From IMG/VR virus record IMGVR_UViG_3300046092_000062, positions 186,001-250,000 of that record: DNA of 64,000 nt. The stretch is one strand, 5' to 3'. Both the position numbers and the translations under genes were made by a program. Every line of letters begins with the position of its first letter. Position 1 is the first letter of the stretch. Positions 1-40,981 of this stretch are shown in pieces. Under the pieces are notes generated by a model, which saw nothing but the letters and a program-made list of their open reading frames with translations, was not told where the DNA came from and made no database searches.

Positions 1-58
1 TACTGTAAGCAAGTCCCAGAGATAGACTCAGGGCAACTTTAAATAAAGGAACTTTATT

Positions 59-2943: not shown

Positions 2944-3229
2944 TTACCTATTGCGCAACGCCCTTAATTCAGATGACGTAGCGTTTCTTAACGAAACTGA
3001 TATGGACTTTGAACTGGTTAACACACATGGTCTCAAACCCGAGTCCAGTATGTTTGACAGTGGGTGGCGCGATATGGCAACCGAACAACGTATTGTTCAT
3101 CATCTCGATCGTGTGGTGTTTAGAAATGTTACCCCAGCGCAGTACACATATCTACAACTTCGCTATCGAGATCGCCTAAATGAATTGACAGACGGCCTAA
3201 AAGGCATATATAATATTACAACGACATAA
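2936..3229 (+). CDS. hypothetical protein, divergent LRW-like tail
   Basis: GTG start; YTYLQLRY resembles CMLQLRY of 18697. Confidence 0.6.
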   Translation: MTDYLLRNALNSDDVAFLNETDMDFELVNTHGLKPESSMFDSGWRDMATEQRIVHHLDRVVFRNVTPAQYTYLQLRYRDRLNELTDGLKGIYNITTT

Positions 3230-3282
3230 CAAAGGAGAAACTCATGTCACAAGCCTAGATCAACTACCAATGTAAGGAATTA

Positions 3283-3819
3283 GTGTTCCACTTCAATAAG
3301 GGACATCTTACAGATCCAACCATCCCCATGTGGGTTATCAAAACACACGGAGTCACCTTTTACGTGAACCACGTGACAGCAGAAATACCTTGGAGCACCA
3401 AGGAAACACCAAACAATCCCAGTACCAAAGGCAGCATCAAGTTTAAACGATGTAAGTTGACCATTGACTCCGATAACTGTGCAACGTTATCCAAGTTGGG
3501 TTTACTAGACCGTAACTTGCCGACGCCACACCTGCCTTATGATCGCATTATTGTGCCTATGTACTGCGATTTAACTAATGCTATCATCGACCGTGAGTTT
3601 AAGCATGGTATGATCAAGCATGTAGATGGAGCATGTGGCAGTGAGTACATCATTACTGAAATTACAAATAGAGATGATATGCTAATGTTGGCACTCAAGT
3701 ATCCTAATCAGTATCGTGTGCTAAATGCAAATGAAGCATACTACAAGGATTATGATAACAAGCACATTCATATTGAGATGCGTGGTAATGAAGGATTTAA
3801 CGATGAAGAAGACGATTGA
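3283..3819 (+). CDS. hypothetical protein with internal LRW-like motif
   Basis: GTG start after AAGGA; internal TNRDDMLMLALKY. Confidence 0.7.
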   Translation: MFHFNKGHLTDPTIPMWVIKTHGVTFYVNHVTAEIPWSTKETPNNPSTKGSIKFKRCKLTIDSDNCATLSKLGLLDRNLPTPHLPYDRIIVPMYCDLTNAIIDREFKHGMIKHVDGACGSEYIITEITNRDDMLMLALKYPNQYRVLNANEAYYKDYDNKHIHIEMRGNEGFNDEEDD

Positions 3820-3979
3820 CTTAAAAGTTCCATATAAAGATATACACGAGGTTAGGCAGGCCCTTAAAGAGTCTAAAATAAAGCACTGGCCGTTTAAACG
3901 AGCATGGCCGGGGTATATAGTTACAATCGAAGATGGGCCTATGAGCACGTTTTTTGCGTTAAAGTTTACTAATACTTGA
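3803..3979 (+). CDS. LRW-family mini-protein (outlier before array I)
   Basis: AAGGA SD, ATG 3803; tail IEDGPMSTFFALKFTNT. Confidence 0.65.
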   Translation: MKKTIDLKVPYKDIHEVRQALKESKIKHWPFKRAWPGYIVTIEDGPMSTFFALKFTNT

Positions 3980-4024
3980 GTATTACTTTTTTTGGTTGAC
4001 CCATAATGAGCGTTCATGTATAAT
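3970..4024 (+). promoter_or_regulatory. early promoter with upstream palindromic box
   Basis: AATACT-TG-AGTATT palindrome, T-tract, TTGACC(3996)-17-TATAAT(4019). Confidence 0.85.
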
Positions 4025-4052
4025 ACATATATCGCAAACAAAAGGGTCAACC

Positions 4053-4409
4053 ATGAAATTCTTTCAAGAAACTACTGACTACAAAGACAAGATTTCAAAC
4101 GGCATCTACTTGCTGTCAGATGACAAGACACGTATGTTTGCCTATGTTGCACCAGGCAACAACACTGCAAAAGAATTCAAGCGCCCGATTCGCATCGACA
4201 CTCGTGGCCGCAGCTTCAAGCCTGTTACTAATACCTTCAACTATGTGATCCCTGCAGAAGTTGCCCCAGAAGTCCCGCAGTGGATTGTTAAAGGCAGCAA
4301 AGGCGATGAGTACATTGTGCGCAAAGACGGCTTGATGTATTCATGTACATGCAGCGGATTTAAATTTCGCGGTAGCTGCAAGCACGTCACGGAGATCAAA
4401 GGCGCATGA
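4053..4409 (+). CDS. SWIM-type zinc finger protein
   Basis: C-terminal YSCTCSGFKFRGSCKHV (CxC-xn-CxH). Confidence 0.75.
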   Translation: MKFFQETTDYKDKISNGIYLLSDDKTRMFAYVAPGNNTAKEFKRPIRIDTRGRSFKPVTNTFNYVIPAEVAPEVPQWIVKGSKGDEYIVRKDGLMYSCTCSGFKFRGSCKHVTEIKGA

Positions 4410-4615
4410 TTAAACGTCAGTATCATTACTATGGTGGCCGCAACGGCGATGCCTACTTCTGCAACTTTGTTGATGCAGCGGGCGGGCAAGAACACATTCG
4501 TACTGAACTAGCTAAGTGGAAAGCAACAGTTGCTAAAAGCAAAGCCAAATACACCTACAATGTCAAGTTCCACGACGAGCAGTTATACATGTTTTTTAGG
4601 ATCAAGTTTTCATGA
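4406..4615 (+). CDS. LRW-family mini-protein I-1
   Basis: tail FHDEQLYMFFRIKFS. Confidence 0.75.
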   Translation: MIKRQYHYYGGRNGDAYFCNFVDAAGGQEHIRTELAKWKATVAKSKAKYTYNVKFHDEQLYMFFRIKFS

Positions 4616-4863
4616 CAGAAGCGTGGATATTCGTTAATGGACAGAAGGTTCAGATTCCTCAGCATCCTTACCAAGCCAGGGAGTTTAGATGGCATTTGGG
4701 CGCAGAGTATAATTCTGCATTGGAGTGGGAAAATCCCGAGTTTGACAACATAAAAACTTGGTGCGAGCAAACTTGTGTTCCGCATACTTACAGAATGTTT
4801 TTGAGAAGTGTTTGGTTCTTTCGTGAGTCCGATGCCTTATTGTGCAAGTTGAGGTGGGTATGA
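4612..4863 (+). CDS. LRW-family mini-protein I-2
   Basis: WCEQ core; tail FFRESDALLCKLRWV. Confidence 0.85.
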   Translation: MTEAWIFVNGQKVQIPQHPYQAREFRWHLGAEYNSALEWENPEFDNIKTWCEQTCVPHTYRMFLRSVWFFRESDALLCKLRWV

Positions 4864-5090
4864 ACTGGCAGTTTTGGCGTAAGCAATATCGAGTGGCTGT
4901 GACAGAAAATGATTACAATGCTAAGATTGTAAAGCACATGGGCACTACTGGAAAACTCCATATGCAGTTTTTCGACTTTGTTAAGCAAGAGTTCAATGCT
5001 GATCGTGAGTGGAGTTGGAAGACCAGAGAGAATTTCCTAGTGTTTGATAATGAACATGACTACGCTATGTTTCTGTTAAGGATGCTGTGA
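4860..5090 (+). CDS. LRW-family mini-protein I-3
   Basis: start ATG 4860 (ATGA overlap); tail FDNEHDYAMFLLRML. Confidence 0.85.
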   Translation: MNWQFWRKQYRVAVTENDYNAKIVKHMGTTGKLHMQFFDFVKQEFNADREWSWKTRENFLVFDNEHDYAMFLLRML

Positions 5091-5341
5091 TGTTGATCGA
5101 ACTCGACGATGAATATCGTATGATTGGGTACTACATCGCCGTACTAGAAGATCCAATTGACAGCGGGCACGATTTGTGGTATCACGAATCATTCAAAGAC
5201 ACCGATGAATGGTGTGAGCAAACCTTTGGGGCGCAGGACATGTGGGGAGAAAATCCTGCTACAGGGTGGAAGCGTATGCGTAACAGATACTTCTTTACTA
5301 CAGATGCTGCCCGCGGGTTATTTGTATTGAGGTTTACATGA
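5087..5341 (+). CDS. LRW-family mini-protein I-4
   Basis: WCEQTFG core; tail FTTDAARGLFVLRFT. Confidence 0.85.
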   Translation: MMLIELDDEYRMIGYYIAVLEDPIDSGHDLWYHESFKDTDEWCEQTFGAQDMWGENPATGWKRMRNRYFFTTDAARGLFVLRFT

Positions 5342-5559
5342 TTGAAGTAGATATCGATAAAGAAGGCGGATATGGTCGTCACCACTGGTGGGAAAACTTT
5401 CGCGACTATGCTGAGGAACAGGGGTATAATTTCGATAATGCTGAGAATATCACCAAAGCACTTGCAGAATGGAACGCTATTGATAAGGACCCAGATTCCA
5501 CCAAGTTCTACTTTGAAAACGAGCAGGACCACTTGCTGTTTATGTTGAGGTTTACATGA
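5338..5559 (+). CDS. LRW-family mini-protein I-5
   Basis: tail FENEQDHLLFMLRFT. Confidence 0.85.
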   Translation: MIEVDIDKEGGYGRHHWWENFRDYAEEQGYNFDNAENITKALAEWNAIDKDPDSTKFYFENEQDHLLFMLRFT

Positions 5560-5840
5560 AAGTAAAAGACACACTGCAAATTGATTTGATCTACGGCACA
5601 CTCCGTCAACGCCTGCGGGAGTTTGTAGCAGAGACTCCTTGCTTGTATACAAATGACGGAGACGCTGTTAACCTTGTGTGTCATTATTTCCCCTGTTGGC
5701 AGTACAATGGTGCTGCACCGTTTGAAGAAGTTATGCTGTGGTGTGAAGAACATTTCGGCCGTGATTGGATTTGGAGATTTGAAACAATTTTCTTCAAGCA
5801 CGAACGTGATCGTGCAGTATTCTTATTGAGGTGGTCATGA
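5556..5840 (+). CDS. LRW-family mini-protein I-6
   Basis: WCEEHFG core; tail FKHERDRAVFLLRWS. Confidence 0.85.
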   Translation: MKVKDTLQIDLIYGTLRQRLREFVAETPCLYTNDGDAVNLVCHYFPCWQYNGAAPFEEVMLWCEEHFGRDWIWRFETIFFKHERDRAVFLLRWS

Positions 5841-6058
5841 CAACTCTTTACATCTCCGGGGATTACGACCAAAGCCCACTGGCATACAAAAACTTCTATC
5901 GAGCAGTGATAGAACCCAGGTTAATGGAAGTACACCGTGAATCAATTAGCGGAAGTGATCTCCTTAAAGAGTACAATGCACATTGGGATAATACATCTAA
6001 GAGCATTGTGTTTGACACTGAACACGATTTGACAATGTTTATGTTGAGGTGGGCATGA
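5837..6058 (+). CDS. LRW-family mini-protein I-7
   Basis: tail FDTEHDLTMFMLRWA. Confidence 0.85.
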   Translation: MTTLYISGDYDQSPLAYKNFYRAVIEPRLMEVHRESISGSDLLKEYNAHWDNTSKSIVFDTEHDLTMFMLRWA

Positions 6059-6306
6059 TTGTAAAAGAGTATTACCAAAACATTAACTGTAGCAAACCCA
6101 GGGACTACTTTGAGCGTTGGTATGCAGACGTGTGGGCACGACGAATCGGCACAAAGATCGCACAGCCCGGAGTGTTAGCTCGTGTACTCGAAGAAGAAAT
6201 TGCTCAAGTTGGTGCTTATCTCGAGGACAAAGATCGCGGGTACAAATTTGTAGCAACATTCAAAGACGAGCACGACTATACCATGTTTGTATTGAGGTGG
6301 TCATGA
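6055..6306 (+). CDS. LRW-family mini-protein I-8
   Basis: tail FKDEHDYTMFVLRWS. Confidence 0.85.
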   Translation: MIVKEYYQNINCSKPRDYFERWYADVWARRIGTKIAQPGVLARVLEEEIAQVGAYLEDKDRGYKFVATFKDEHDYTMFVLRWS

Positions 6307-6530
6307 AACTACGTGCCGACATTCGTCCATACTTTCAGAAGATTGCTGATTACTATTGGGACAACATTGGTCGTGACTTCTACAACGAAGGGCATCACAT
6401 AACCATTTGGGACTGGCTCAAGCGTGATTACTCTGTGGTTAAGATTGGGCAAATTGGCAGCAAGACTGAGTTATGGGTTACATTTCCAGATGAGCAGCAC
6501 ATGACTATGTTTATGTTGAGGTGGACATGA
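6303..6530 (+). CDS. LRW-family mini-protein I-9
   Basis: true start ATG 6303 (track ORF extended upstream); tail FPDEQHMTMFMLRWT. Confidence 0.85.
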   Translation: MKLRADIRPYFQKIADYYWDNIGRDFYNEGHHITIWDWLKRDYSVVKIGQIGSKTELWVTFPDEQHMTMFMLRWT

Positions 6531-6727
6531 AACAAGAGCTAACTATGCGCATGGATTGCGAATACACTTACATTCCATTTGCCAATAGCCGCACCAGCAT
6601 CGATTGGATAGAAGCACTACTTTGGTGCGAAGAGTTCGAAGGCATTGGACACTTTAGCATGGGAGGACATGGCATTTACTTCGAAAAGGAAAAAGATGCT
6701 ATAATGTTTACATTAATCAACTCATGA
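6527..6727 (+). CDS. LRW-family mini-protein I-10
   Basis: WCEE core; tail FEKEKDAIMFTLINS. Confidence 0.85.
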   Translation: MKQELTMRMDCEYTYIPFANSRTSIDWIEALLWCEEFEGIGHFSMGGHGIYFEKEKDAIMFTLINS

Positions 6728-7005
6728 AAAAGCAATATACAAGAGACTCCCTTATGAAAAAGGCACGTATTGAATCCGACCAGCTAAACACTATCTTCCA
6801 GAAGTGGGCGGCAAACAATGGGTATAAGACCTCAGGACATTGGATTGATCACCTTGATCGACTTAACCTGCGTTACGGCCCTGGCCAAGCGTTTGATCAT
6901 TATGTTTGGTCATGCGGTGGCCGCATTTACACAGAATACAGCAAGCGTTATGCAGACTTCTTTGAAGACGAAGATTTGATAATGTTTACATTAAGGCACC
7001 TATGA
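6724..7005 (+). CDS. LRW-family mini-protein I-11
   Basis: tail FEDEDLIMFTLRHL. Confidence 0.8.
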   Translation: MKKQYTRDSLMKKARIESDQLNTIFQKWAANNGYKTSGHWIDHLDRLNLRYGPGQAFDHYVWSCGGRIYTEYSKRYADFFEDEDLIMFTLRHL

Positions 7006-7187
7006 TAACAACTTTACGAGCATGGTCCAGAGTTAGTGTAAGAGACATTCAACCAGCAGTAGCATGGTGCAGTGAGAATCTTACCCACAATGATTGGGTG
7101 TGCAGTTCGATCCCAAACGACAACGAATTTAGCTTTCGATTCCGTAACGAAAAGATTGCTACAGAGTTTGCACTGAGATTTGCATGA
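7002..7187 (+). CDS. LRW-family mini-protein I-12
   Basis: WCSENL core; tail FRNEKIATEFALRFA. Confidence 0.85.
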   Translation: MITTLRAWSRVSVRDIQPAVAWCSENLTHNDWVCSSIPNDNEFSFRFRNEKIATEFALRFA

Positions 7188-7429
7188 TACGATTAGATCT
7201 TGTTAAAGACTATGCACCTATTCCGATATGGAACAAATTTGTTGGACACCTGCAAGAACAAGTGGGACCACAGGCAGTAACTGACGCTTATGTTAATACC
7301 GCACTAGCTGAGTACTGTGCAGTGTATTATATGGAAGAGGTGGGTAACATATATGAAAGTTCTGTGCTACACTGGATTGAGTTTGAAGATGAAGAATTGT
7401 ACTCTTGGTTTATGTTGAGGTGGGCATGA
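7184..7429 (+). CDS. LRW-family mini-protein I-13
   Basis: tail FEDEELYSWFMLRWA. Confidence 0.85.
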   Translation: MIRLDLVKDYAPIPIWNKFVGHLQEQVGPQAVTDAYVNTALAEYCAVYYMEEVGNIYESSVLHWIEFEDEELYSWFMLRWA

Positions 7430-7683
7430 TTAGCATATTGTTATCAGACAAGGGCAGTACTCCCGAACAAGCATGGTGGTGGAAGTTTTTACACGGCACG
7501 GATAAACGTAGCGGTCCGTCAACTACAGAAGACCGCATTGAAGCTATCAACTTGGAATTGCTAAATTGGTCAGCGCAGCTATGGCGACACGAGCAAACGG
7601 CTACGCGCCACAATGCCCGAAGCGCATACATTGATTTCTACGACGAACAAGCGTACACTTGGTTTGTGCCGAGGTGGTCATGA
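7426..7683 (+). CDS. LRW-family mini-protein I-14
   Basis: tail FYDEQAYTWFVPRWS (Pro at the conserved Leu). Confidence 0.85.
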   Translation: MISILLSDKGSTPEQAWWWKFLHGTDKRSGPSTTEDRIEAINLELLNWSAQLWRHEQTATRHNARSAYIDFYDEQAYTWFVPRWS

Positions 7684-7874
7684 TTGAAATTAAAATCAGC
7701 AAGAAACTTCGTAATGTATACGGGGAAAGTGGTACTCAGGTTGCTTGGAAATGGTGCTTAGATAACTTTGGCCCACCGGAACCAAACGGTAAGCGTTGGG
7801 CATGGGACACTATGCGCACATTTTGGTTTCATAAAGAAGAAGATGCTACACTGTTTGCACTGAGGTGGTTATGA
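7680..7874 (+). CDS. LRW-family mini-protein I-15
   Basis: WCLDNFGP core; tail FHKEEDATLFALRWL. Confidence 0.85.
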   Translation: MIEIKISKKLRNVYGESGTQVAWKWCLDNFGPPEPNGKRWAWDTMRTFWFHKEEDATLFALRWL

Positions 7875-8098
7875 CAACAATTTCAATGAGCCATAATGTT
7901 CTAACAAATGCAGGGTGGATCCGCATACCGCTTGACGCTGAAAAAGTTATGCAAGCTCGACGACATGAAAGTTATTTTGAATTTTTTGAAACTGCACACA
8001 TTCGCAACCGGTATGCAATCTTTAGTGTGCCCAATGGATACGATTTCTTTTTTCGAAATAAAAAAGATGCTACAGAGTTTGTGTTGAGGTGGGCATGA
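7871..8098 (+). CDS. LRW-family mini-protein I-16
   Basis: tail FRNKKDATEFVLRWA. Confidence 0.85.
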   Translation: MTTISMSHNVLTNAGWIRIPLDAEKVMQARRHESYFEFFETAHIRNRYAIFSVPNGYDFFFRNKKDATEFVLRWA

Positions 8099-8385
8099 CT
8101 AAAGAAGAATGGACGAAATGGAATCGCAAGATACAACTAAACAGCATCTACGGTTTAAATCTCTGTAAAGAAATAGTGGCACCAAGGGATCAAGCACTAA
8201 CAGCGATACAAAACGCATGGGCTCAATGGCACTGTGATATCAAACACAACGTAACAGACTTTGGGTTTAAAGACTGGTGCAAGCGTGAGCATGGGTTTGA
8301 ATACCAACAGAATAGTGACCGGAGTGTTGTCACTACTGTACTTGACGAGCAAAAGTATGCTTGGTTCTTACTAAAGTGGGCATGA
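8095..8385 (+). CDS. LRW-family mini-protein I-17 with N-terminal PolB motif-B-like fragment
   Basis: N-term NRKIQLNSIYG; tail VLDEQKYAWFLLKWA. Confidence 0.85.
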   Translation: MTKEEWTKWNRKIQLNSIYGLNLCKEIVAPRDQALTAIQNAWAQWHCDIKHNVTDFGFKDWCKREHGFEYQQNSDRSVVTTVLDEQKYAWFLLKWA

Positions 8386-8388
8386 AAG

Positions 8389-8598
8389 ATGCAAGTAGAG
8401 AAAATGTTCCATCACACTGTGCCTAGCTCTAATGTGTGCATACAAGCCAGTAAATGGTTGCTGGAAGAGCGTGGATACAAGTTCGTCATTGAAGCCGAAA
8501 CAGAAGGACGCGGCAACAGTTCTAGATACACTGGCAGATACACATTCAAGTTCTTGTGTGAGCAAGAGTATATGTGGTTTCTAATGAGGTGGGCATGA
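8389..8598 (+). CDS. LRW-family mini-protein I-18 (close paralogue of 23627)
   Basis: tail RYTGRYTFKFLCEQEYMWFLMRWA. Confidence 0.85.
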   Translation: MQVEKMFHHTVPSSNVCIQASKWLLEERGYKFVIEAETEGRGNSSRYTGRYTFKFLCEQEYMWFLMRWA

Positions 8599-8599
8599 C

Positions 8600-8779
8600 A
8601 TGTTAACATACCGTATGATTGACTGGGTCAACATTCAACAACGCATGATTGAAGGCGGACTCAGTGATATTCCCAATGGGCGATTTCATGACAGCTACCG
8701 TAAGGACGATTACTTGTACTTTATGGTTGAGTTCGACACACCCGAGGATGAAATGATGTTTTTATTGAGGTGGGCATGA
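8600..8779 (+). CDS. LRW-family mini-protein I-19 (59 aa, missing from ORF track)
   Basis: hand translation MLTYRMIDWVNIQQ...FDTPEDEMMFLLRWA. Confidence 0.8.
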   Translation: MLTYRMIDWVNIQQRMIEGGLSDIPNGRFHDSYRKDDYLYFMVEFDTPEDEMMFLLRWA

Positions 8780-9000
8780 ACTCAAAACAAAGACGACGTG
8801 ATCGCAGAGCATGGAAACACGACATTGTGTTTACACACGAACAAGTTTATGAACGTGGTTACAACGACATGTGGGACTGGTGTGTTACTGTTTTTAATAA
8901 CAGGGGCAACAAGTGGAGAGAGCCGTATGGTCCTCCGGGCGTTAGATGGCAGTTTACCAAGCCAGAATACGCTGTGATGTTTGCACTACGCTGGCAATAA
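8776..9000 (+). CDS. LRW-family mini-protein I-20
   Basis: DWCVTVF core; tail FTKPEYAVMFALRWQ. Confidence 0.85.
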   Translation: MNSKQRRRDRRAWKHDIVFTHEQVYERGYNDMWDWCVTVFNNRGNKWREPYGPPGVRWQFTKPEYAVMFALRWQ

Positions 9001-9002
9001 AG

Positions 9003-9058
9003 TAGTACTTGAGTATTACATTTTTTTGGTTGACCCAAAATGGTTTTGGTTGTATAAT
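9003..9058 (+). promoter_or_regulatory. early promoter with palindromic box (near-copy of 3970 element)
   Basis: TAGTACTTGAGTATTAC, T-tract, TTGACC(9030)-17-TATAAT(9053). Confidence 0.85.
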
Positions 9059-9090
9059 ATACACATAGCAAAGCAAAACAGGACTCAAAG

Positions 9091-9357
9091 ATGACACGCA
9101 AAATGAATCAACCAAAGACTATTTTGAAGAACATCATGGAAGATGCTTCTTGGCCCAGCGAGGCCCGTGCAAAAGCAGCTTGGACTGATGAGAAAATTGC
9201 TGCTGATTTGGCAGATTTTGCTGAGCAGATGTGGCACAATCAGTACATTGAAGTTGATGTTAGCAAGGTAACTGGTGACGCTTTCCGTGCAGCAGCCGCA
9301 AAGCGCGAAGAATACCTTAAAGATTTGTGGGCCGGTTGCCCAGAAGAAAACATGTAA
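9091..9357 (+). CDS. hypothetical protein
   Basis: 88-aa ORF directly downstream of promoter. Confidence 0.65.
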   Translation: MTRKMNQPKTILKNIMEDASWPSEARAKAAWTDEKIAADLADFAEQMWHNQYIEVDVSKVTGDAFRAAAAKREEYLKDLWAGCPEENM

Positions 9358-9362
9358 AACGG

Positions 9363-9401
9363 TTGCACCATAATGATTTTGGTGCTATAATATACACATA
9401 G
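9363..9401 (+). promoter_or_regulatory. early promoter for ligase operon
   Basis: TTGCAC-17-TATAAT; 9368-9401 identical (34 nt) to 44367-44400. Confidence 0.85.
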
Positions 9402-9421
9402 AACGAAACAAAGGAACACAA

Positions 9422-10738
9422 ATGAACAAGCCATGGGACGTAATCGCAGAACTCGAAAGTGACAACAGCCGCCTGTTTAAGGAAGCAGTTATTGCCCGTG
9501 AGAGCAAAGCCGGTAACACAGAAGTGTTTCGGGGTTTTCGTGCTGCATACGATGCAATGGTGACATTCGGTGTTAAGAAAGTTGATGTCAAAACTGGCGA
9601 CGGCCCTGGCATCAGCTCGGGCGCATTTTGGGACATTGCCCGCAAACTTGCAGACCGTGAACTCACAGGTGGTGCTGCTCAAACTGCTATCAACTTCTTG
9701 CGTATGCAAGCAACAGAAGAAGAATGGAACAACTGGTATCGTCGCATCTTGATCAAGGACATGCGTTGCGGTGCTAGCGACAGTATTGTTAACAAGGTTG
9801 CTGATCCCAAATACCATGTGCCAGTTTTTGAATGCCAACTTGCGCACGATGGTGCCAAGCACGAAGGCAAGATCAAAGGTCACAAGACTATCGAAGTCAA
9901 GCTGGATGGTATGCGTGTGCTTACCATTGTTTACCCAACAGGTCAAGTTGATCAATACAGCCGCAATGGTAAAGAGCTGGTTAACTTTGAAGTTGTTAAG
10001 CAACAGATTGCCAAGCACGCCAAGTTCTTTAAAGAGCCAATGGTACTCGACGGTGAGATCATGAGCGCCAGCTTCCAAGACTTGATGAAGCAGGCCAAGC
10101 GCAAGACCAACGTCGACGCAGATGATGCAGTGCTTAACTTGTTTGACATTATCCCACTCGACGAGTTCCAAGCAGGTGTGGGTTCACGTACCCAAGCAGA
10201 ACGCAGCGTGGATCTTTTGGCTTGGTTTACACCTTGCGAAGATCACATGCCCAACGTCACTGTGGTGGGTCAAGAAGATGTGGATCTCGATACCCCAGAA
10301 GGCTACGCACGGTTCAAAGAGATCAATGCACAAGCCATTGCAGCAGGTTACGAAGGCATTATGCTTAAAGAACCCAATGCAGTTTACGAGTGCAAGCGCA
10401 CAGTGAGCTGGCTCAAAATCAAGCCCTTCATTGAAGTGTCACTGACTGCGGTTGCCATTGAAGAAGGTACTGGCAAGAACGTGGGCAAAATGGGTGCAGT
10501 GTTGTTTGAAGGCACAGACGACGGCAAGTTCATCCGCGTAAGCGTTGGTGGCGGCTGGAGCGATAAGGATCGTGCAGACATTTGGGCTGCTCGCAATACA
10601 CCAGAATCTGTTGTAGGCGATGTAGGCGAAGTTCGTGCAGATGCTGCTACGCTGAATCAAGACAGCACAGATGTTTGGAGCTTGCGATTCCCACGTTTTA
10701 AAACATGGCGCGGCTTTGCTAAAGGTGAGAAGCTGTGA
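9422..10738 (+). CDS. lig: ATP-dependent DNA ligase
   Basis: motif I EVKLDG, SRNGK, LDGEI, FDII, EGIMLK, WLKIK, OB-fold end SLRFPRF. Confidence 0.95.
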   Translation: MNKPWDVIAELESDNSRLFKEAVIARESKAGNTEVFRGFRAAYDAMVTFGVKKVDVKTGDGPGISSGAFWDIARKLADRELTGGAAQTAINFLRMQATEEEWNNWYRRILIKDMRCGASDSIVNKVADPKYHVPVFECQLAHDGAKHEGKIKGHKTIEVKLDGMRVLTIVYPTGQVDQYSRNGKELVNFEVVKQQIAKHAKFFKEPMVLDGEIMSASFQDLMKQAKRKTNVDADDAVLNLFDIIPLDEFQAGVGSRTQAERSVDLLAWFTPCEDHMPNVTVVGQEDVDLDTPEGYARFKEINAQAIAAGYEGIMLKEPNAVYECKRTVSWLKIKPFIEVSLTAVAIEEGTGKNVGKMGAVLFEGTDDGKFIRVSVGGGWSDKDRADIWAARNTPESVVGDVGEVRADAATLNQDSTDVWSLRFPRFKTWRGFAKGEKL

Positions 10739-10911
10739 TACCTTATACTGATTACGAACGATTAGCCTTACTCGAAGAACTTGAGCGAGGTGAGAAAATC
10801 ATTCTTCCCATTAGCGAAAACCACGCTTATGAAATGATATACGTGGCTGCAAAATACATCCAAGATCGCAAAAACGAAACTTGGTCAGCATTGACTAAGG
10901 AATACAAATGA
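10735..10911 (+). CDS. hypothetical protein (58 aa, not in track)
   Basis: GTGA overlap with ligase stop; MIPYTDYERLALLEELERGEK... Confidence 0.6.
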   Translation: MIPYTDYERLALLEELERGEKIILPISENHAYEMIYVAAKYIQDRKNETWSALTKEYK

Positions 10912-11037
10912 TTCAAACTCTTGCTGATTGGTTGTTTGCTGATGCGTGGCAACAATGCGCTGCTCGTTACGAGTATGCTGCAAAAACTTTTAAGGTTACC
11001 AATGACGCCTGAAATTTTTCACCGCAATCGTTTAGTG

Positions 11038-16979: not shown

Positions 16980-17162
16980 ATGAACTCTATCACAATCAAT
17001 GGTGCCGATAAGGCACTCGAAGCAGGCGGCTGGTGCAGAAAACAATTTGGTATTAAGGGATGGACAATAGACTTGAACAGTATGTTGGGCAACAATCCCA
17101 CGTATAGGTTTGATTTCTCTAGTCCCGCTGATGCTACACTATTTGCATTAAAATGGCGGTAA
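16980..17162 (+). CDS. LRW-family mini-protein II-1
   Basis: WCRKQFG; tail FSSPADATLFALKWR. Confidence 0.85.
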   Translation: MNSITINGADKALEAGGWCRKQFGIKGWTIDLNSMLGNNPTYRFDFSSPADATLFALKWR

Positions 17163-17410
17163 CTTTAGTCGTTCATGAATTTACACTAGGTGACGTAGAT
17201 GATCCCGAAATCTACGCAGCCGTGCCCTTGTATGAATGGCAATTGAGTGATGCCGGTAAATGGGTTATGGAAAATGCTATTGAAACTCCCCAGTGGGGCA
17301 GAATCAATGATCATCTCACGTACTCACTTCGTTACAGAGTAACTGCAAAGCTCAAAGATGAGGATGCAACCTTTTTCAAGTTAAAGTATGATCACACTAA
17401 CCGACGCTGA
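17153..17410 (+). CDS. LRW-family mini-protein II-2
   Basis: tail LKDEDATFFKLKY. Confidence 0.8.
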   Translation: MAVTLVVHEFTLGDVDDPEIYAAVPLYEWQLSDAGKWVMENAIETPQWGRINDHLTYSLRYRVTAKLKDEDATFFKLKYDHTNRR

Positions 17411-17615
17411 GTGGCGTAATATTAGAAATCAAATCAGAATTGAATACGCCGACAAGCCCAGTGTTTGGCTATTGCGCTCTGTAATGAAGCGTGAGTTAGG
17501 ATTTACTGACCGCCATCATCAAGTATACAGAGAACAAACAGGTTACATCACTACTGTCTACTTGGACTTCTTTAATGATGCAGCAGAAACAATGTTTAGA
17601 TTGAAGTACTTATAA
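17388..17615 (+). CDS. LRW-family mini-protein II-3
   Basis: tail FFNDAAETMFRLKYL. Confidence 0.8.
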   Translation: MITLTDAEWRNIRNQIRIEYADKPSVWLLRSVMKRELGFTDRHHQVYREQTGYITTVYLDFFNDAAETMFRLKYL

Positions 17616-17831
17616 TTGGAATTCATTGCACGTATACTGCCCAAGTTAATTGCTGGTGTCCTAAGCATTATGGATGCCAGTCGCTTGCGGGATAAAGTAT
17701 ACCAGCAACAACACGAGCATGAGTTGATGTGGACTGCACTAGATGATATCGCACGTATGCACCCAGATCATCCGTCAGGAAAAATGGCAAAGAAAACACT
17801 AGATGAAGTTACTACACGCTACGGTAGGTAG
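17616..17831 (+). CDS. hypothetical protein (non-LRW)
   Basis: 71-aa ORF abutting previous stop. Confidence 0.65.
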   Translation: MEFIARILPKLIAGVLSIMDASRLRDKVYQQQHEHELMWTALDDIARMHPDHPSGKMAKKTLDEVTTRYGR

Positions 17832-18219
17832 GTTTCAGGCATGGCGCCATGCACGTTACCTCAAAAAGAAGGGCTGGACCCAGCGCCAGTTTGACCTCAT
17901 CAACGATCCTGATTTTTGCGCACGTGGCAGCAGTATTCGTAAAGATGTCTATCGCGGCTATCCCTACTTAATCTCGTTTGACGACACAGTACCAATGGAA
18001 CGGCGATATGGTCAAGGATGGATCACCGTAGTTGATAATATGACAGCGTGGTGCGAAGCGAATGTTACAGGCAAATGGAGAGAAGATATCCTTGCAGTCG
18101 ACAAGAGTTGGGACGACGAATGGACGCAAGGGTGCATGGGCCTAAGCCACAACATTCTATTCTTTGCATTTAACAATGAGCAAGATGCAGTAATGTTTAG
18201 TCTATACTGGAGTGTGTAA
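17803..18219 (+). CDS. LRW-family protein II-4 with long N-terminal extension
   Basis: AWCEAN core; tail FNNEQDAVMFSLYWSV; start uncertain. Confidence 0.8.
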   Translation: MKLLHATVGRFQAWRHARYLKKKGWTQRQFDLINDPDFCARGSSIRKDVYRGYPYLISFDDTVPMERRYGQGWITVVDNMTAWCEANVTGKWREDILAVDKSWDDEWTQGCMGLSHNILFFAFNNEQDAVMFSLYWSV

Positions 18220-18437
18220 TGAACATCGAATTCAAACATCGCCCGGACCGATACTACGAGTGGGAAATGTACTACAGTCCACAGGGCCCCGAAATGGGCG
18301 AAGTATACGGTTGGTGCTGGGAAACATTCGGTCACCCAGGACTAGCATTAGGTAATGGAACTTGGGATAACCACGGCGGATGGATTAAGTTTCGCAGAGA
18401 AGAAGATATGACTATGTTTATGTTGAGGTGGAGCTAA
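18219..18437 (+). CDS. LRW-family mini-protein II-5
   Basis: WCWETFG; tail FRREEDMTMFMLRWS. Confidence 0.85.
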   Translation: MNIEFKHRPDRYYEWEMYYSPQGPEMGEVYGWCWETFGHPGLALGNGTWDNHGGWIKFRREEDMTMFMLRWS

Positions 18438-18703
18438 TGGAATTATTTTATGGTGGCGGCGGACGCAGTAACCCGGACTTTATACACAAGGTGCGGGTTA
18501 GCAAAAAACGTGCAGGTGATGTTAGTCCACTGATGAAGTGGTGCGACGATTACCCAACTGGTGATAAGGGCTACTTTAAACGCTACTACATCGATTGGCG
18601 TGGTGACACAAAGAGCTGGGATAGTGACTATGTTACATTCCAATTTGAATGGGAACAAGCTGCTATCATGTTTGCTCTAAGTTTTGCGGACAGCGTATGC
18701 TAA
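18437..18703 (+). CDS. LRW-family mini-protein II-6
   Basis: KWCDD; tail FEWEQAAIMFALSF. Confidence 0.8.
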   Translation: MELFYGGGGRSNPDFIHKVRVSKKRAGDVSPLMKWCDDYPTGDKGYFKRYYIDWRGDTKSWDSDYVTFQFEWEQAAIMFALSFADSVC

Positions 18704-18981
18704 CAACAGTAAGAATTTGGGTACTAGATCACAATGTTATCCCCGACCAATCCGATGTAGACTACTGCAAGAACAACGGCATACAACTAGACGCCCAGCA
18801 AGGTGAGCATCAGCGTATCGAAACTGGCAGCGGGCAGGTCTATCACTACCGCACCTCACCCGGGGTCATAAAGCTAACCACATTTGACGAGAAAAGCGAA
18901 TGTATGTTACAATTACGCTACGCAGGTAGAATCCATCTAATGCAACAAATTTACACCGAGTCTGTAACACATTCGTATTAA
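18697..18981 (+). CDS. divergent LRW-like protein II-7
   Basis: FDEKSECMLQLRY; similar to 2936. Confidence 0.65.
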   Translation: MLTTVRIWVLDHNVIPDQSDVDYCKNNGIQLDAQQGEHQRIETGSGQVYHYRTSPGVIKLTTFDEKSECMLQLRYAGRIHLMQQIYTESVTHSY

Positions 18982-19310
18982 TGAAAGTTCGTCTTAAAAA
19001 TGGCCGCATTGGAGAGCATCGCCTTAAGTGGGACAACAACCCAATGGGCATTGCGCCATTGCTAATAGGATCGGAGACTGTGGAATTGGATATCACTGAA
19101 CGAATTTACAACGGGCCCGACTGCTACCCGTGGCGCAAGACGTTTGCACTTTGGCCAGTTAAAACAATAGGTGGTAGCCGCATTTGGTTACGCACTGTTT
19201 ACAAACAACGATTCTGGGCAGTGTGGGGCAAAGGCTTTCACATGGAGCCCTGGGTTGAATATGCAACACTATTTGAGATTTTAAAACATGAACCTAAATC
19301 ATCTATCTGA
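18981..19310 (+). CDS. Trp-rich hypothetical protein (non-LRW)
   Basis: WRKTFALWPVKT.GG..IWL..VY. Confidence 0.75.
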   Translation: MKVRLKNGRIGEHRLKWDNNPMGIAPLLIGSETVELDITERIYNGPDCYPWRKTFALWPVKTIGGSRIWLRTVYKQRFWAVWGKGFHMEPWVEYATLFEILKHEPKSSI

Positions 19311-19764
19311 CGTAGAGCTGCTACGCTACTTGGATTTGACTAGCACTGATCCATTGGTTATTCGTTTGATCAACATGCTGTCTGCACCTAACGGTGGGCT
19401 TGTTGGTGATTTAGTGGAAGCAGGCATGGATCCTAACACATGGGTCTTTACAGACGATCACCAAGACTACTACCCCGGAGATTACATCACCCACTTGCAA
19501 AAGATGGTTGCCTACGCAGAAGATGACCGTGCGGTAGCCGAAATGGATTTAGCGGATGCTCGTGAAGAACTTGATAAGTTAAGTCGACGCACCGTTACAG
19601 AACTTCTAGTAGATGCGCAGCGGGCAATTGACTCTGCAAAATCCAATCACCTTTACGCAGTTAGAGAAGCTGAAAAAGCTCACGAAGTAATTGACAAGGT
19701 ACAAGCAGAGAATAGACATCTCAAAGAGCAATTGGGCATGTGGAATATTTTAGGGACAGAGTAA
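19288..19764 (+). CDS. coiled-coil hypothetical protein
   Basis: heptad-like C-terminal half. Confidence 0.75.
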   Translation: MNLNHLSDVELLRYLDLTSTDPLVIRLINMLSAPNGGLVGDLVEAGMDPNTWVFTDDHQDYYPGDYITHLQKMVAYAEDDRAVAEMDLADAREELDKLSRRTVTELLVDAQRAIDSAKSNHLYAVREAEKAHEVIDKVQAENRHLKEQLGMWNILGTE

Positions 19765-19765
19765 C

Positions 19766-20032
19766 ATGGACAACGTTATTCACAGCAACAAATATTTCCG
19801 ATTAACTAAATGGCGCCATCGCAAAAGCGACAAGGTGCATTATCGCGTTGAGATGACATACAGTTGGTTGAATCTGGACCAAGAAGCAGGGGAGAAAAGT
19901 TTTCCTGAGCAAGTTCGCGATGTAATCGACCCAACTCGTTGTCGTGCTGGGCAAGCTGGCAACCACTGGAAATACCGTAACTTAGAAGAAGCTACAAAAG
20001 CCTATACATTTTTAGTAATGAAATTCTCATGA
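19766..20032 (+). CDS. LRW-family mini-protein II-8 (divergent)
   Basis: tail YRNLEEATKAYTFLVMKFS. Confidence 0.7.
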   Translation: MDNVIHSNKYFRLTKWRHRKSDKVHYRVEMTYSWLNLDQEAGEKSFPEQVRDVIDPTRCRAGQAGNHWKYRNLEEATKAYTFLVMKFS

Positions 20033-20310
20033 GTTATAAACTTAAACTAGCACACAAGCATCACGATCAATTAGATCAAATTGAAGCATGGCTCAACGCT
20101 AACGTTGGCCCTGGTAGCAAACGACATGCAAACAACACCTGGCTCGGTGCCGAAGATTGGTACTGCTATGAAGAAGCACTAGTTCCGGGCAGCGAGGAAG
20201 AGGAAGAAGAGTATTACGACAACGATGACAATCTTGAAGATATTTCAGATTTGATCTTTGTATTCCGCCGCGAAAGCGATCTGTTAATGTTTAGTTTGAA
20301 ATGGGCATAG
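20029..20310 (+). CDS. LRW-family mini-protein II-9 with acidic insertion
   Basis: SEEEEEEYYDNDDNLED; tail FRRESDLLMFSLKWA; TAG stop. Confidence 0.85.
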   Translation: MSYKLKLAHKHHDQLDQIEAWLNANVGPGSKRHANNTWLGAEDWYCYEEALVPGSEEEEEEYYDNDDNLEDISDLIFVFRRESDLLMFSLKWA

Positions 20311-20311
20311 C

Positions 20312-20668
20312 ATGTCTAGTCCTTTTAAACTCACAGATCTCCCCAACAACACTTGGTCAGTAACATGGACCGAGAATAACTTTGCACATAATGCTAAACA
20401 GCGAGACAAGTTAGTAGATATTCTGTTTAGCGAAATTGGATGCCGCGACGTTGGCCTAGGCATTAAACTAAACAATGGCGAACTAGAAACACTGTGGATT
20501 GGTGAAAAAGAGTATTTTCAACGGTCCGACATAGCCCACGGATGGGAAGACATGTATGTTGTTCGTGGTGTTGTGTTCATTCACGAACACGAAGCTAGGG
20601 AGTTTCATCAATTGATGGAAAGTCGATTGGCTTGGTACTACTTAAAGCAAGGTGCAGCAGTTGCTTGA
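20312..20668 (+). CDS. divergent LRW-like protein II-10
   Basis: FIHEHEAREF followed by a helical extension. Confidence 0.65.
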   Translation: MSSPFKLTDLPNNTWSVTWTENNFAHNAKQRDKLVDILFSEIGCRDVGLGIKLNNGELETLWIGEKEYFQRSDIAHGWEDMYVVRGVVFIHEHEAREFHQLMESRLAWYYLKQGAAVA

Positions 20669-20879
20669 AATTCCATACCCAACCCTAATGAATGGCAGTC
20701 GCACGTTCTCTATGGAAACTCTACAAAAGTGGCTTGACGCACACTTTCCTCAAGAACGTTCCTGCATTGTCCGTGTTGCTATTGTTAACAAAGGGCCTGG
20801 GAGGTACGGCGACGAACGATGGGCGATTCGTTTTTATCGGGATGAAGATGCAACACTGTTTGGATTGTTATGGCAGTAA
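20652..20879 (+). CDS. LRW-family mini-protein II-11
   Basis: tail FYRDEDATLFGLLWQ; start GTG 20652 or ATG 20688. Confidence 0.8.
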   Translation: MQQLLEIPYPTLMNGSRTFSMETLQKWLDAHFPQERSCIVRVAIVNKGPGRYGDERWAIRFYRDEDATLFGLLWQ

Positions 20880-21127
20880 CCTATAAAACTAATCCGGGAT
20901 TCCCAGGTGTTAATTTTCCCGTGTTGCACCGTGTTGTCTATGCACACACCATCGATGGTGTCCCAGCACAATGGCAAATCAGCTACAAGGATTATATAGT
21001 CAATGAATGGCTTAAAGCAAACACACGCCATCCTTACTACCACAGTCCCGGGTATCTTCGTGAAAAGTTCATTGAGTTTGAATGTGATGAAGAAGCAGTG
21101 CTATTCGCACTAAAGTGGGCAAAGTAA
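20870..21127 (+). CDS. LRW-family mini-protein II-12
   Basis: tail FECDEEAVLFALKWAK. Confidence 0.85.
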   Translation: MAVTYKTNPGFPGVNFPVLHRVVYAHTIDGVPAQWQISYKDYIVNEWLKANTRHPYYHSPGYLREKFIEFECDEEAVLFALKWAK

Positions 21128-21357
21128 TGTACAGCAAGACTCACCGATTTTTTAAATTCAAACACGTTCCCAAGGACTTTATATGGGGCAGTGAGGAAAT
21201 TGACCTGTGCCGCCTGCACATTGGTGACAACCGTATCACGATGCCGCTTGTGGACCGCGAATGGTTTAGTTCGCCCGATGGTGTATGGATTCGACATGAT
21301 TGTCTGGATAACGAAATCATAACTTGGTTTGCACTGAAAGCAAGCAATGAAGTTTGA
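21127..21357 (+). CDS. LRW-family mini-protein II-13
   Basis: tail LDNEIITWFALKA. Confidence 0.75.
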   Translation: MYSKTHRFFKFKHVPKDFIWGSEEIDLCRLHIGDNRITMPLVDREWFSSPDGVWIRHDCLDNEIITWFALKASNEV

Positions 21358-21607
21358 ACTGCTAGAAGGGCGCATACACGGAGCCCGTTACTACACAGTT
21401 AGACCAGACTTTAATTGGTGGCTTTCGGGCAGCTTAAACAATACAAATGCCACCTGGCGTGATATGTTAGAATGGTGTGTAGAAGTATTCGGTCCTAGCG
21501 CAGAAATGGGTGTGTGGGAACCCGGTGCTCGTTGGTATGCTAACAATGCAAAGTTTTGGTTTCGTAATGCAGAAGATAGGACAGCGTTTTTGCTGAGATG
21601 GTCATGA
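21347..21607 (+). CDS. LRW-family mini-protein II-14
   Basis: EWCVEVFGP; tail FRNAEDRTAFLLRWS. Confidence 0.85.
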   Translation: MKFELLEGRIHGARYYTVRPDFNWWLSGSLNNTNATWRDMLEWCVEVFGPSAEMGVWEPGARWYANNAKFWFRNAEDRTAFLLRWS

Positions 21608-21837
21608 AACCAGACCTAGTCCAATTTTACTGCGAACGAGATCCCTATTACGCTAAATCACGTGAGTACTACATGATGAACGTAAATCATTACGAAACTC
21701 CTTATTACCTTTGGATGATACAGGAATATCGCACTGTGCTGTTAAACAAACAGGGTAGCTGGAGCGACAGGGCTGAACAGCATTGGGGCTTTATTAATGA
21801 ATCGGATAGAACAATTTTTATGTTGAGATGGTCATGA
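21604..21837 (+). CDS. LRW-family mini-protein II-15
   Basis: tail FINESDRTIFMLRWS. Confidence 0.85.
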   Translation: MKPDLVQFYCERDPYYAKSREYYMMNVNHYETPYYLWMIQEYRTVLLNKQGSWSDRAEQHWGFINESDRTIFMLRWS

Positions 21838-22064
21838 CAACTACTGTTGAATTTGGTAAAGATCGTTATCACTTACAGGGTGAAATGGAAGAATGGTGCG
21901 AGCACAATATTGGGTCTAATCCTCGTTATAGCAACCACGTTTGGTCCAAGCCAGTTGAGTGGGAAGGGTTAGGCACATGGTGCATGGCTAGTGCGTTTGG
22001 CACAACATTTTTCTACTTTAAACATCGCAAAGATGCAACCTTCTTTGCATTGAAATGGAAATAA
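21834..22064 (+). CDS. LRW-family mini-protein II-16
   Basis: EWCEHNIG; tail FKHRKDATFFALKWK. Confidence 0.85.
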   Translation: MTTTVEFGKDRYHLQGEMEEWCEHNIGSNPRYSNHVWSKPVEWEGLGTWCMASAFGTTFFYFKHRKDATFFALKWK

Positions 22065-40925: not shown

Positions 40926-40981
40926 GTAATACAAAGTATTACATAATTTTGGTTGACCCATAAAGATTTCCTTGTTATAAT
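40926..40981 (+). promoter_or_regulatory. early promoter with palindromic box
   Basis: GTAATAC-AAA-GTATTAC; TTGACC(40953)-17-TATAAT(40976). Confidence 0.85.

What the first reader, a model, noticed from the sequence alone, without database searches (positions are those of the whole stretch)
3970..9058. Array I is bracketed by about 40-bp direct repeats (promoter plus palindrome)
Seen: TA(A/G)TACTTGAGTATTAC(T/A)TTTTTT..GGTTGACCCA(T/A)AATG at 3970 and 9003 encloses the SWIM gene plus all 20 cassettes. Inference: recombination between the copies would excise or tandemly amplify the whole 5-kb block (gene-accordion behaviour), or the block arrived as a promoter-delimited module.
Basis: partly seen in the sequence, partly recalled or inferred. 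Interest (0 to 1): 0.6.

Follow-up and report, generated by a model that had tools for sequence, protein, structure and literature searches.

The report
Ordinary promoter modules flanking a phage operon
The two 40-bp repeats are real, but they are two of about fifty copies of this jumbo phage's standard "palindrome plus early promoter" punctuation, marking the start of two neighbouring operons rather than the ends of a mobile or amplifying 5-kb block.

Summary
The repeat is confirmed: 3970-4008 and 9003-9042 match at 37 of 40 positions and enclose a SWIM-like gene plus 20 small paralogous genes. The window lies in a 320-kb uncultured phage with a T4-type capsid gene.

The pair is not private. 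The genome has about 50 near-consensus sigma-70-type promoters with the same leader, nearly all on the + strand. At least 7 carry the same AT-rich palindrome (GTA-R-TAC, 3-4 nt, GTA-Y-TAC) just upstream. The right copy's promoter core is 97% identical to promoters 16 and 57 kb away, but only 72% to the left copy. The same palindrome-plus-promoter occurs in 71 other viral contigs.

The interval 4053-9000 has no strong internal promoter and reads as one 21-gene operon.

Relatives do not treat the interval between the repeats as a unit. SWIM directly abuts the DNA ligase in many relatives. The cassettes and the right module are the insert, and cassette number changes one gene at a time (20, 15, 4-6, 0).

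Promoter-to-promoter indels do occur (two clean cases against a 90%-identical genome). They are no more frequent than expected from gene junctions.

Closest known: PeSL promoter/stem-loop cassettes of T4-type phages. A read-level test could not be run.

The parts
3969..3986 (+). Left palindrome (CTAATAC TTGA GTATTAC). A degenerate member of the GTA-R-TAC/GTA-Y-TAC family. The stop codon (TGA, 3977-3979) of the upstream gene lies in its loop.
   Evidence: As RNA it is weak and is not the minimum-energy fold (-3.7 kcal/mol, z -0.6).
3987..4024 (+). T7-GG tract and left sigma-70-type promoter (-35 TTGACC 3996-4001, 17-nt spacer, -10 TATAAT 4019-4024).
   Evidence: Scores 11 of 12 consensus positions. 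Member of a genome-wide promoter family.
4025..4052 (+). Leader with SD (AAGGG) before the ATG at 4053.
4053..4409 (+). SWIM-like zinc-finger gene (118 aa, C-x-C-x9-C-x-H near the C terminus). First gene of the operon.
   Evidence: Pfam SWIM is sub-threshold: E 0.015, 15.3 bits against a cut-off of 19.6. Two orthologs score the same way. Orthologs abut the ligase in many relatives.
4406..9000 (+). Twenty small paralogous genes (59-96 aa). They end in F-x2-E-x-D-x3-F-x-L-R-W, and 17 of the 20 gene junctions in the operon are 4-nt ATGA overlaps.
   Evidence: No strong internal promoter.
9002..9019 (+). Right palindrome (GTAGTAC TTGA GTATTAC), 1 nt after the TAA of the last cassette.
   Evidence: RNA hairpin -5.9 kcal/mol, z -1.8. 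The same position after the last cassette holds a palindrome in L008.
9020..9058 (+). A-T7-GG tract and right promoter (-35 9030-9035, -10 9053-9058).
   Evidence: Scores 11 of 12. The core is 97% identical to the promoters at genome 179200 and 137824.
9091..9357 (+). 88-aa gene of unknown function, driven by the right promoter.
9363..9391 (+). Promoter of the same family without a palindrome (TTGCAC-17 nt-TATAAT), just before the ligase gene.
9422..10738 (+). ATP-dependent DNA ligase. It is the conserved anchor gene used to find relatives.
   Evidence: Pfam PF01068 (E 1e-20) and PF14743. Relatives.
40926..40981 (+). A third palindrome-plus-promoter module in the window (GTAATAC AAA GTATTAC, then TTGACC-17 nt-TATAAT).
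   Evidence: Hairpin -7.1 kcal/mol, z -3.6.

Best explanation
The two repeats are two members of the phage's standard composite intergenic regulatory module. Its order is: stop codon of the upstream gene, a short AT-rich palindrome, a T-rich tract, a near-consensus sigma-70-type early promoter, a conserved leader, an SD and an ATG.

The left module starts a 21-gene polycistronic early operon (the SWIM-like gene plus 20 small paralogs, joined by ATGA overlaps). The right module closes that unit and starts the next one (g9091, then the ligase behind a further promoter).

Their likeness comes from membership of a dispersed, functionally constrained and probably recombinationally homogenised family. 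It does not come from being the scars or substrates of a block-level event.

Shown: the sequence family, its copy number, its conservation in relatives, the operon layout, and the pattern of gene gain and loss in relatives. Inferred: promoter activity, early timing, and the role of the palindrome. My preferred reading of the palindrome is a weak terminator/attenuator or insulator of the upstream unit, as in PeSLs. That sub-claim is only about 40% likely.

Like PeSLs, the modules can occasionally serve as cross-over points for small gene-sized indels.
For: About 41-53 + strand copies of TTGMMM-16-18 nt-TATAAT with a shared leader, against one on the - strand.

At least 7 copies carry the GTA-N-TAC palindrome 8-12 nt upstream of the -35. 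They lie at genome 88195, 133695, 136864, 139483, 189969, 195002 and 226926.

The right copy's -35..-10 core is 97% identical to two distant promoters but only 72% to the left copy. Its best overall partner is the module at genome 139513.

Only three sites scoring at least 11 of 12 occur in 3000-11000 (3185, 3996, 9030), and none lies inside 4053-9000. Of the 20 gene junctions, 17 overlap by 4 nt.

The same palindrome plus promoter is present in 71 IMG/VR contigs and at least 17 gene contexts, with 3-8 copies per 200-250-kb record.

The module position is conserved. L111/L112/L114/L128 have a palindrome-promoter directly before SWIM. L008 has one before the SWIM region and another right after the last cassette, driving the ligase.

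The genome encodes a T4-type Gp23 capsid protein. The architecture matches the published PeSL definition, in which each lineage has its own stem sequence.
Against: Promoter and terminator activity are untested, and the host is unknown.

The palindromes are weak as RNA (-3.7 to -8.1 kcal/mol), and the left one does not fold as the palindrome at all. The terminator scan does not call them, because they have only 2 G-C pairs.

In three relatives a canonical GC-rich terminator lies between the palindrome and the promoter. This argues that the palindrome is not, or not only, the terminator.

The 14-nt exact identity of the two palindromes is specific to this genome's pair. In the 90% relative L005 the two corresponding modules are much less alike. 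Some local exchange or homogenisation between copies therefore cannot be excluded.
Confidence: 0.8

Rival explanations
1. Gene-accordion reading. The two modules act as direct repeats for homologous recombination that recurrently excises (as a circle) or tandemly amplifies the whole 5-kb SWIM-plus-cassette block.
For: Exact runs of 17 and 14 nt lie in direct orientation 5 kb apart. T4-type recombination needs less than 50 bp, and PeSL pairs give mini-circles at about 1 in 100,000 virions (PMC2839356). Two clean promoter-to-promoter indels exist between this genome and G006/L005: a 202-bp one at genome 183718/183920, and a roughly 480-bp gene between L005 9130 and 9611, where the window has one chimeric module.
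Against: No two cassettes are alike beyond their 22-29-nt junctions, so there has been no recent amplification. Those junctions offer 20 equally long or longer homologies (up to 24 of 24 nt). Relatives differ by single cassettes bounded at junctions. Relatives without cassettes keep SWIM fused to the ligase, which recombination between the two modules cannot produce. The deletion junction and the circle/tandem junction were absent from metagenome contigs, although no positive control was possible. Genome-wide, 9% of 132 breakpoints lie in promoter modules, against 9.4% of gene ends.
Confidence: 0.1
2. The block arrived by horizontal transfer as one promoter-delimited module (a moron-like or PeSL-cassette insertion).
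For: L015 (ligase 74% identical) lacks SWIM and array I. It carries five unrelated genes between the g3803 homolog and the ligase, so the whole interval can be replaced. GC content and skew do not set the block apart, but that is neutral evidence.
Against: SWIM next to the ligase is the widespread, and so probably ancestral, arrangement. The stop and start overlap as TAATG in L112, and the gap is 20-50 nt in L118-122 and L145-151. Sixteen further paralogs of the cassettes sit in a second array 8-18 kb downstream in the same genome, and also in L015. Cassette number grades 0, 4-6, 15, 20 across relatives. In L015 homology ends at the gene ends, and no chimeric module can be placed.
Confidence: 0.07
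3. The palindrome is not a terminator. It is a sequence-specific protein recognition site, on DNA or on the RNA or DNA hairpin, for example for a phage regulator of a subset of early promoters or for a recombination helper. This is compatible with the main explanation and concerns only the palindrome's role.
For: Six of seven stem positions are invariant in at least 17 contexts and in lineages whose surrounding DNA is unalignable. Each arm (GTA-N-TAC) is itself palindromic, and the arms are 10-11 bp centre to centre. The element occurs with either loop orientation (TTGA or TCAA). A-C central mismatches are as common as G-T. Every intergenic copy in 1.3 Mb of unbiased sequence is followed by a promoter, where about 0.5 chance matches are expected. 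Three copies are followed by a separate GC-rich terminator. The PeSL authors raised the same idea for their stems.
Against: The distance to the -35 varies from 0 to about 40 nt and loop length from 3 to 5 nt, which is unusual for an operator. No candidate binding protein was identified. Purine/pyrimidine-only variation at the central pair is also what a tolerated-then-compensated stem would show.
Confidence: 0.3

Closest known systems
PeSLs (promoter-early stem-loops) of T4-type phages (Arbiol, Comeau & Krisch 2010, PMC2839356; Comeau et al. 2014, PMC4122927)
   Same: A composite of roughly 90-100 bp running from an upstream stop codon through an AT-rich tract, a stem-loop just upstream of a sigma-70-like promoter, an SD and an ATG. 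It is dispersed in many copies among small ORFan genes. Each lineage has its own stem sequence. Occasional gene-sized indels leave one chimeric module. The phage has a T4-type Gp23 capsid gene.
   Different: The stem here is AT-rich and weak (GTARTAC/GTAYTAC), not G-run/C-run. Only about 7 of 50 promoters carry it. Terminator activity is untested and is doubtful for the left copy. Indel breakpoints are not enriched at the modules. Mini-circles are untested. The module brackets a 21-gene operon rather than single ORFans.
T4 early promoters and hyperplastic regions of small early genes
   Same: Near-consensus -35/-10 boxes with an A/T-rich upstream tract, and tightly packed, overlapping small early genes of unknown function that vary between relatives.
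   Different: The extended conserved spacer and leader motifs are specific to this lineage. The small genes form one large paralogous family.
Poxvirus gene accordions (recent tandem amplification under selection)
   Same: An array of paralogs whose number differs between relatives.
   Different: The copies here are ancient and less than about 75% identical in DNA, apart from a 22-29-nt junction. There are no near-identical tandem units, and no evidence that the flanking repeats drive copy change.
Integron cassette arrays
   Same: A promoter at one end of a string of short, promoterless, same-strand genes.
   Different: Junctions are coding ATGA overlaps, not attC sites. No integrase lies next to the array. 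Considered from memory only and not pursued.

Membership tests
PeSL regulatory cassette | Sigma-70-like -35 and -10 boxes with about a 17-nt spacer | tested here: met
   TTGACC-17 nt-TATAAT at 3996-4024 and 9030-9058, 11 of 12 consensus positions. Family of about 50 copies.
PeSL regulatory cassette | AT-rich tract upstream of the -35, beginning at the stop codon of the upstream gene, and an SD plus ATG at the 3' end, with conservation over about 100 bp | tested here: met
   T7-GG before the -35. Stops at 3977-3979 and 8998-9000. ATGs at 4053 and 9091. Similarity spans 86 and 91 nt.
PeSL regulatory cassette | A sequence able to form a stem-loop in or next to the promoter | tested here: met
   A palindrome with 7-bp arms and a 3-5-nt loop lies 8-12 nt upstream of the -35 in at least 7 modules. 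It is weak: -5.9 kcal/mol for the right copy, and the left copy's palindrome is not its minimum-energy fold.
PeSL regulatory cassette | The stem-loop terminates or attenuates upstream transcription | not testable with these tools
   Needs a reporter assay or transcript-end data. Indirect signs are mixed: a T7 tail follows, but there are only 2 G-C pairs, and three relatives have an extra GC-rich terminator after the palindrome.
PeSL regulatory cassette | Genes that differ between close relatives are flanked by the modules, and the genome lacking the gene keeps one chimeric module | tested here: inconclusive
   Two clean cases among 66 gaps between G000 and G006. Overall, 12 of 132 breakpoints (9%) lie in modules, the same as the 9.4% of gene ends that are followed by a promoter.
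PeSL regulatory cassette | Mini-circles formed by recombination between neighbouring modules | not testable with these tools
Junction scans of assembled contigs were empty.
PeSL regulatory cassette | Host genome is a T4-type phage | tested here: met
   Gp23 major capsid family PF07068, 327 bits, at G000:2757-3704. There is no close cultured relative.
Intrinsic (rho-independent) terminator | A stable G+C-rich stem followed directly by a U tract | tested here: not met
   A U tract is present (T7), but the stem has 2 G-C pairs of 7 and folds at -3.7 and -5.9 kcal/mol. The scan does not call it.
Gene accordion (recent tandem amplification) | Near-identical tandem units, with copy number varying as whole units between the flanking repeats | tested here: not met
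   Cassettes share only 22-29-nt junctions. Relatives differ by single diverged cassettes.
SWIM zinc finger (PF04434) | A match to the family profile above its curated cut-off, with the C-x-C-xn-C-x-H signature | tested here: inconclusive
   The signature is present and invariant in 4 orthologs. Profile scores are 15.3-16.3 bits against a cut-off of 19.6.

The most novel reading that the evidence does not exclude
The 18-nt palindrome GTA-R-TAC/N3-4/GTA-Y-TAC is a sequence-specific recognition element shared by a large group of uncultured T4-type jumbo phages. It would be bound by a dedicated phage protein that either co-regulates a subset of early operons or targets recombination to the promoter modules, making them truly mobile regulatory cassettes. 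It would not be a mere weak terminator.
Probability: 0.2. Interest if true: 0.55.

Novelty: new member of a known kind. Interest (0 to 1): 0.28.

Why it matters
This result mainly prevents a false lead. Direct repeats that bracket a gene array in a phage can simply be the genome's repeated promoter punctuation, and here they are.

What remains of interest is modest. First, it extends PeSL-type composite promoter/stem-loop cassettes to an uncultured 320-kb T4-type lineage with a distinctive, unusually well-conserved AT-rich stem.

Second, it gives a first quantitative check that such modules are not preferred indel boundaries in this lineage.

Third, it shows how a large early-gene family expanded between two once-coupled genes (SWIM-like and DNA ligase). 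A second promoter module now sits between the array and the ligase, which may keep the ligase expressed.

Tried and rejected
- Near-identity search of 3700-9400 against cultured phages: no match. The SWIM protein also has no match there.
- Pfam and PHROGs on the cassettes, g9091 and g3803: nothing.
- Rfam on 3000-11000 at E up to 1: nothing.
- Scans of metagenome contigs for the predicted deletion junction (g3803 end to g9091 start) and circle/tandem junction (cassette-21 end to SWIM start): 0 hits each. These need exact flanks, assembled contigs drop rare variants, and no positive control was possible, so they count as a weak negative only.
- Terminator reading of the palindrome by energy: the 40-mers upstream of the promoters fold no better than random genomic 40-mers (mean -5.9 against -5.6 kcal/mol).
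- Covariation as a way to separate an RNA stem from a DNA site: only the central pair varies, and both readings predict the same pattern.
- Integron-like reading: rejected, because the junctions are coding overlaps.
- Structure of a cassette protein: a confident model, but no solved-structure match.
Full report
**Setting.** The window is bases 186001-250000 of a 320,767-bp IMG/VR virus record with 92% estimated completeness. It is a large uncultured phage:
- It carries a nicotinamide phosphoribosyltransferase gene, a ClpA-like ATPase and an ATP-dependent DNA ligase.
- It has a T4-type Gp23 major capsid gene (327 bits).
- No cultured phage is close.
- Almost all genes lie on the + strand.

**Observation.** The left copy (3970-4008) and the right copy (9003-9042) align at 37 of 40 columns. 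The longest exact runs are 17 nt and 14 nt.
- Each copy has a palindrome with 7-nt arms and a TTGA loop, then T7-GG, then TTGACC-17 nt-TATAAT, which scores 11 of 12 consensus positions.
- Looser similarity continues through the leader and SD to the ATGs at 4053 and 9091.
- Between the copies lie a 118-aa SWIM-like gene and 20 genes of 59-96 aa.

**The pair is not private.**
- A simple pattern finds 41 + strand and one - strand promoter of this type in the genome. A slightly looser pattern finds 53 on the + strand. Most share the tract AATTT(T/C)GG before the -35 and a leader of the type ACACATAGCAA..AGGA.
- Seven of them carry a palindrome of the form GTA-R-TAC, 3-5 nt, GTA-Y-TAC, 8-12 nt upstream of the -35. 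They lie at genome 88195, 133695, 136864, 139483, 189969 (window 3969), 195002 (window 9002) and 226926 (window 40926).
- Over the -35..-10 core, the right copy is 97% identical to the promoters at genome 179200 and 137824 but only 72% to the left copy. Over the whole module its best partner is the copy at 139513.
- Only the 14-nt palindrome core and the T7-GG-TTGACCCA run are special to the pair.

**Wider distribution.**
- The exact palindrome core followed by TTGWCC occurs in 71 IMG/VR contigs. In nearly all of them the stop codon TAA of the upstream gene forms part of the stem (G-TAA-TAC).
- There are at least 17 different gene contexts, and 3-8 copies per 200-250-kb record.
- In 1.3 Mb of sequence that was not selected for the motif, every intergenic copy is followed by a promoter on the gene strand. 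Only the one orthologous site inside a coding region (genome 133610 and its G006 counterpart) is not. By my estimate about 0.5 chance matches are expected in that sequence.

**The block is one operon.**
- Between 3000 and 11000 the only sites scoring at least 11 of 12 are 3185, 3996 and 9030. None lies inside 4053-9000.
- Seventeen of the 20 junctions are 4-nt ATGA overlaps.
- The last codons of most cassettes (Leu-Arg-Trp, TTG AGG TGG) supply the GAGG Shine-Dalgarno of the next gene.
- The right module then drives g9091. A palindrome-less promoter at 9363 precedes the ligase.

**Relatives, using the ligase as anchor.**
- L005/L006 (ligase 98% amino-acid identity, DNA about 90%):
  - They keep the left module.
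  - They have 15 rather than 20 cassettes. Four window cassettes are missing, one is extra and two are replaced, and each change is bounded at gene junctions.
  - After the array they have a palindrome-promoter, an extra 134-aa membrane-type gene, and then a second promoter.
  - The window has a single module there. Its upstream part and spacer match the first L005 promoter, and its leader and downstream gene match the second. The cross-over falls in the shared stretch from the -10 box to the leader. This is a PeSL-style event at the right copy itself, but it removes or adds one gene, not the 5-kb block.
- L008 (68%) has a palindrome-promoter before the SWIM region, two SWIM-like genes and 4-6 cassettes. 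Another palindrome-promoter lies right after the last cassette and drives the ligase directly.
- L015 (74%) lacks SWIM and array I. Five unrelated genes fill the space between the g3803 homolog and the ligase. Homology stops at the gene ends, so no cross-over can be placed in a module.

**Relatives, using SWIM as anchor.**
- In L111/L112 the SWIM stop overlaps the ligase start (TAATG). In L118-L122 and L145-L151 the two genes are 20-50 nt apart.
- L111, L112, L114 and L128 have one palindrome-promoter directly before SWIM. Its palindrome abuts the -35 with no T tract.
- The common, and so probably ancestral, layout is therefore module-SWIM-ligase.
- The window's cassettes, the right module and g9091 are what has been added between SWIM and the ligase.
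- Recombination between the two repeats would remove SWIM and keep g9091. That layout was not seen in any relative.

**Are the modules recombination hot spots?** I fetched the whole 354,098-bp relative G006 and chained its alignment to the own genome.
- There are 66 gaps of at least 150 bp. Eight of them touch a promoter module.
- Twelve of 132 breakpoints (9%) lie in a module, which equals the 9.4% of 405 approximate + strand gene ends that are followed by a promoter.
- Two events are clean promoter-to-promoter exchanges: the one above, and a 202-bp one at genome 183718/183920 that leaves a single chimeric promoter in G006.
- Thirteen insertions of about 550-800 bp stand out, eleven of them in G006. 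Three of the ten G006-specific insert ORFs scanned show homing-endonuclease hallmarks (GIY-YIG, HNH, NUMOD3), of which only NUMOD3 passes Pfam's own cut-off.
- Inside array I the cassettes share only their 22-29-nt junctions, up to 24 of 24 nt. These junctions are at least as good recombination substrates as the bracketing repeats, and there are twenty of them.

**What the palindrome does is open.**

For a terminator or attenuator, as in PeSLs:
- It sits at or on the upstream stop codon.
- It is followed by a T tract in this genome.
- Loop length and the distance to the -35 vary.

Against that reading, or for a sequence-specific site:
- The hairpins are weak (-3.7 to -8.1 kcal/mol), and the left copy does not adopt the palindromic fold. 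The 40-mers upstream of promoters fold no better than random genomic 40-mers.
- Six of seven stem positions never change across lineages.
- Both loop orientations occur, and A-C central mismatches are as common as G-T.
- In three relatives a canonical GC-rich terminator lies between the palindrome and the promoter.

Rfam has no match.

**Comparison with the literature.**
- PeSLs are composite promoter/stem-loop cassettes of T4-type phages. [quoted passage not shown] Recombination between them yields indels and mini-circles (PMC2839356; PMC4122927).
- The modules here meet the architectural criteria, and the phage has a T4-type capsid gene.
- The recombination criterion is met only anecdotally, and terminator function and circles could not be tested.
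- I therefore file the modules as a new member of that kind, with an unusual AT-rich, highly conserved stem.

**Limits.**
- The two junction scans of assembled metagenome contigs were empty but lack a positive control.
- Gene calls used for the null model are approximate.
- Promoter activity, timing and host are inferred.

Noticed in passing
window 4406-9000 (array I) and 16980-26910 (array II): About 36 small paralogs end in F-x2-E-x-D-x3-F-x-L-R-W. The Leu-Arg-Trp codons (TTG AGG TGG) double as the Shine-Dalgarno of the next gene, and 17 of the 20 gene junctions in the array I operon (4053-9000) are ATGA overlaps. The conserved C terminus may therefore be partly constrained at the RNA level.
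   Followed up: partly
window 7680-7874 (representative cassette): AlphaFold on 65 paralogs gives a confident beta-alpha-beta-beta-alpha fold (pLDDT 83.7). There is no solved-structure match. The only matches are uncharacterised proteins of uncultured Caudovirales, and there is no Pfam or PHROG family.
   Followed up: partly
L112:4067-4420; also L118-L122 and L145-L151: The small SWIM-like zinc-finger gene is directly, and in L112 translationally (TAATG), coupled to the ATP-dependent DNA ligase in many relatives. This suggests a functional pairing that the cassette array has split in the window's lineage.
   Followed up: partly
L102:13124-13804 (-), L102:1023-1679 (+), L100:1339-1977 (+), and other G006-specific inserts: The 90%-identical relative carries eleven extra insertions of about 610-740 bp between genes. 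Three of the ten insert ORFs scanned match GIY-YIG, NUMOD3 or HNH families, so they are probably free-standing homing endonuclease genes. Only NUMOD3 passes Pfam's curated cut-off; the GIY-YIG and HNH scores fall just below it.
   Followed up: partly
window 23020-23205 and 24593-24673: Two short matches just above the cut-off to the Gp23 major-capsid Pfam profile lie inside ORFs of array II. The protein atlas also lists a small-protein cluster with partial Gp23 annotation near the cassette family. Meaning unknown.
   Followed up: no
G006 reverse strand 161406; L115:2607; L123:15459: Here the conserved palindrome is followed by a canonical GC-rich hairpin plus T run, and only then by the promoter. 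The palindrome and the terminator are therefore separable elements.
   Followed up: partly
G000:C1:183718-183950 (about 2.1-2.3 kb upstream of the window start): Two promoters 202 bp apart flank a tiny ORF. The relative G006 has one chimeric promoter with the cross-over inside the -35 region, a textbook promoter-to-promoter deletion or insertion.
   Followed up: yes
G000:C1:54155-71214: Several promoters of the family directly follow sequences that look like tRNA 3' ends (GGTTCGAATCC-type). This suggests a tRNA gene cluster with individual promoters. It was not scanned with the tRNA tool.
   Followed up: no
window 8389-8598 versus 23694-23893: This is the only cassette pair with DNA similarity over most of its length (74% over 201 nt). 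The array I copy is absent from L005, which hints at transfer of a cassette between the two arrays.
   Followed up: partly
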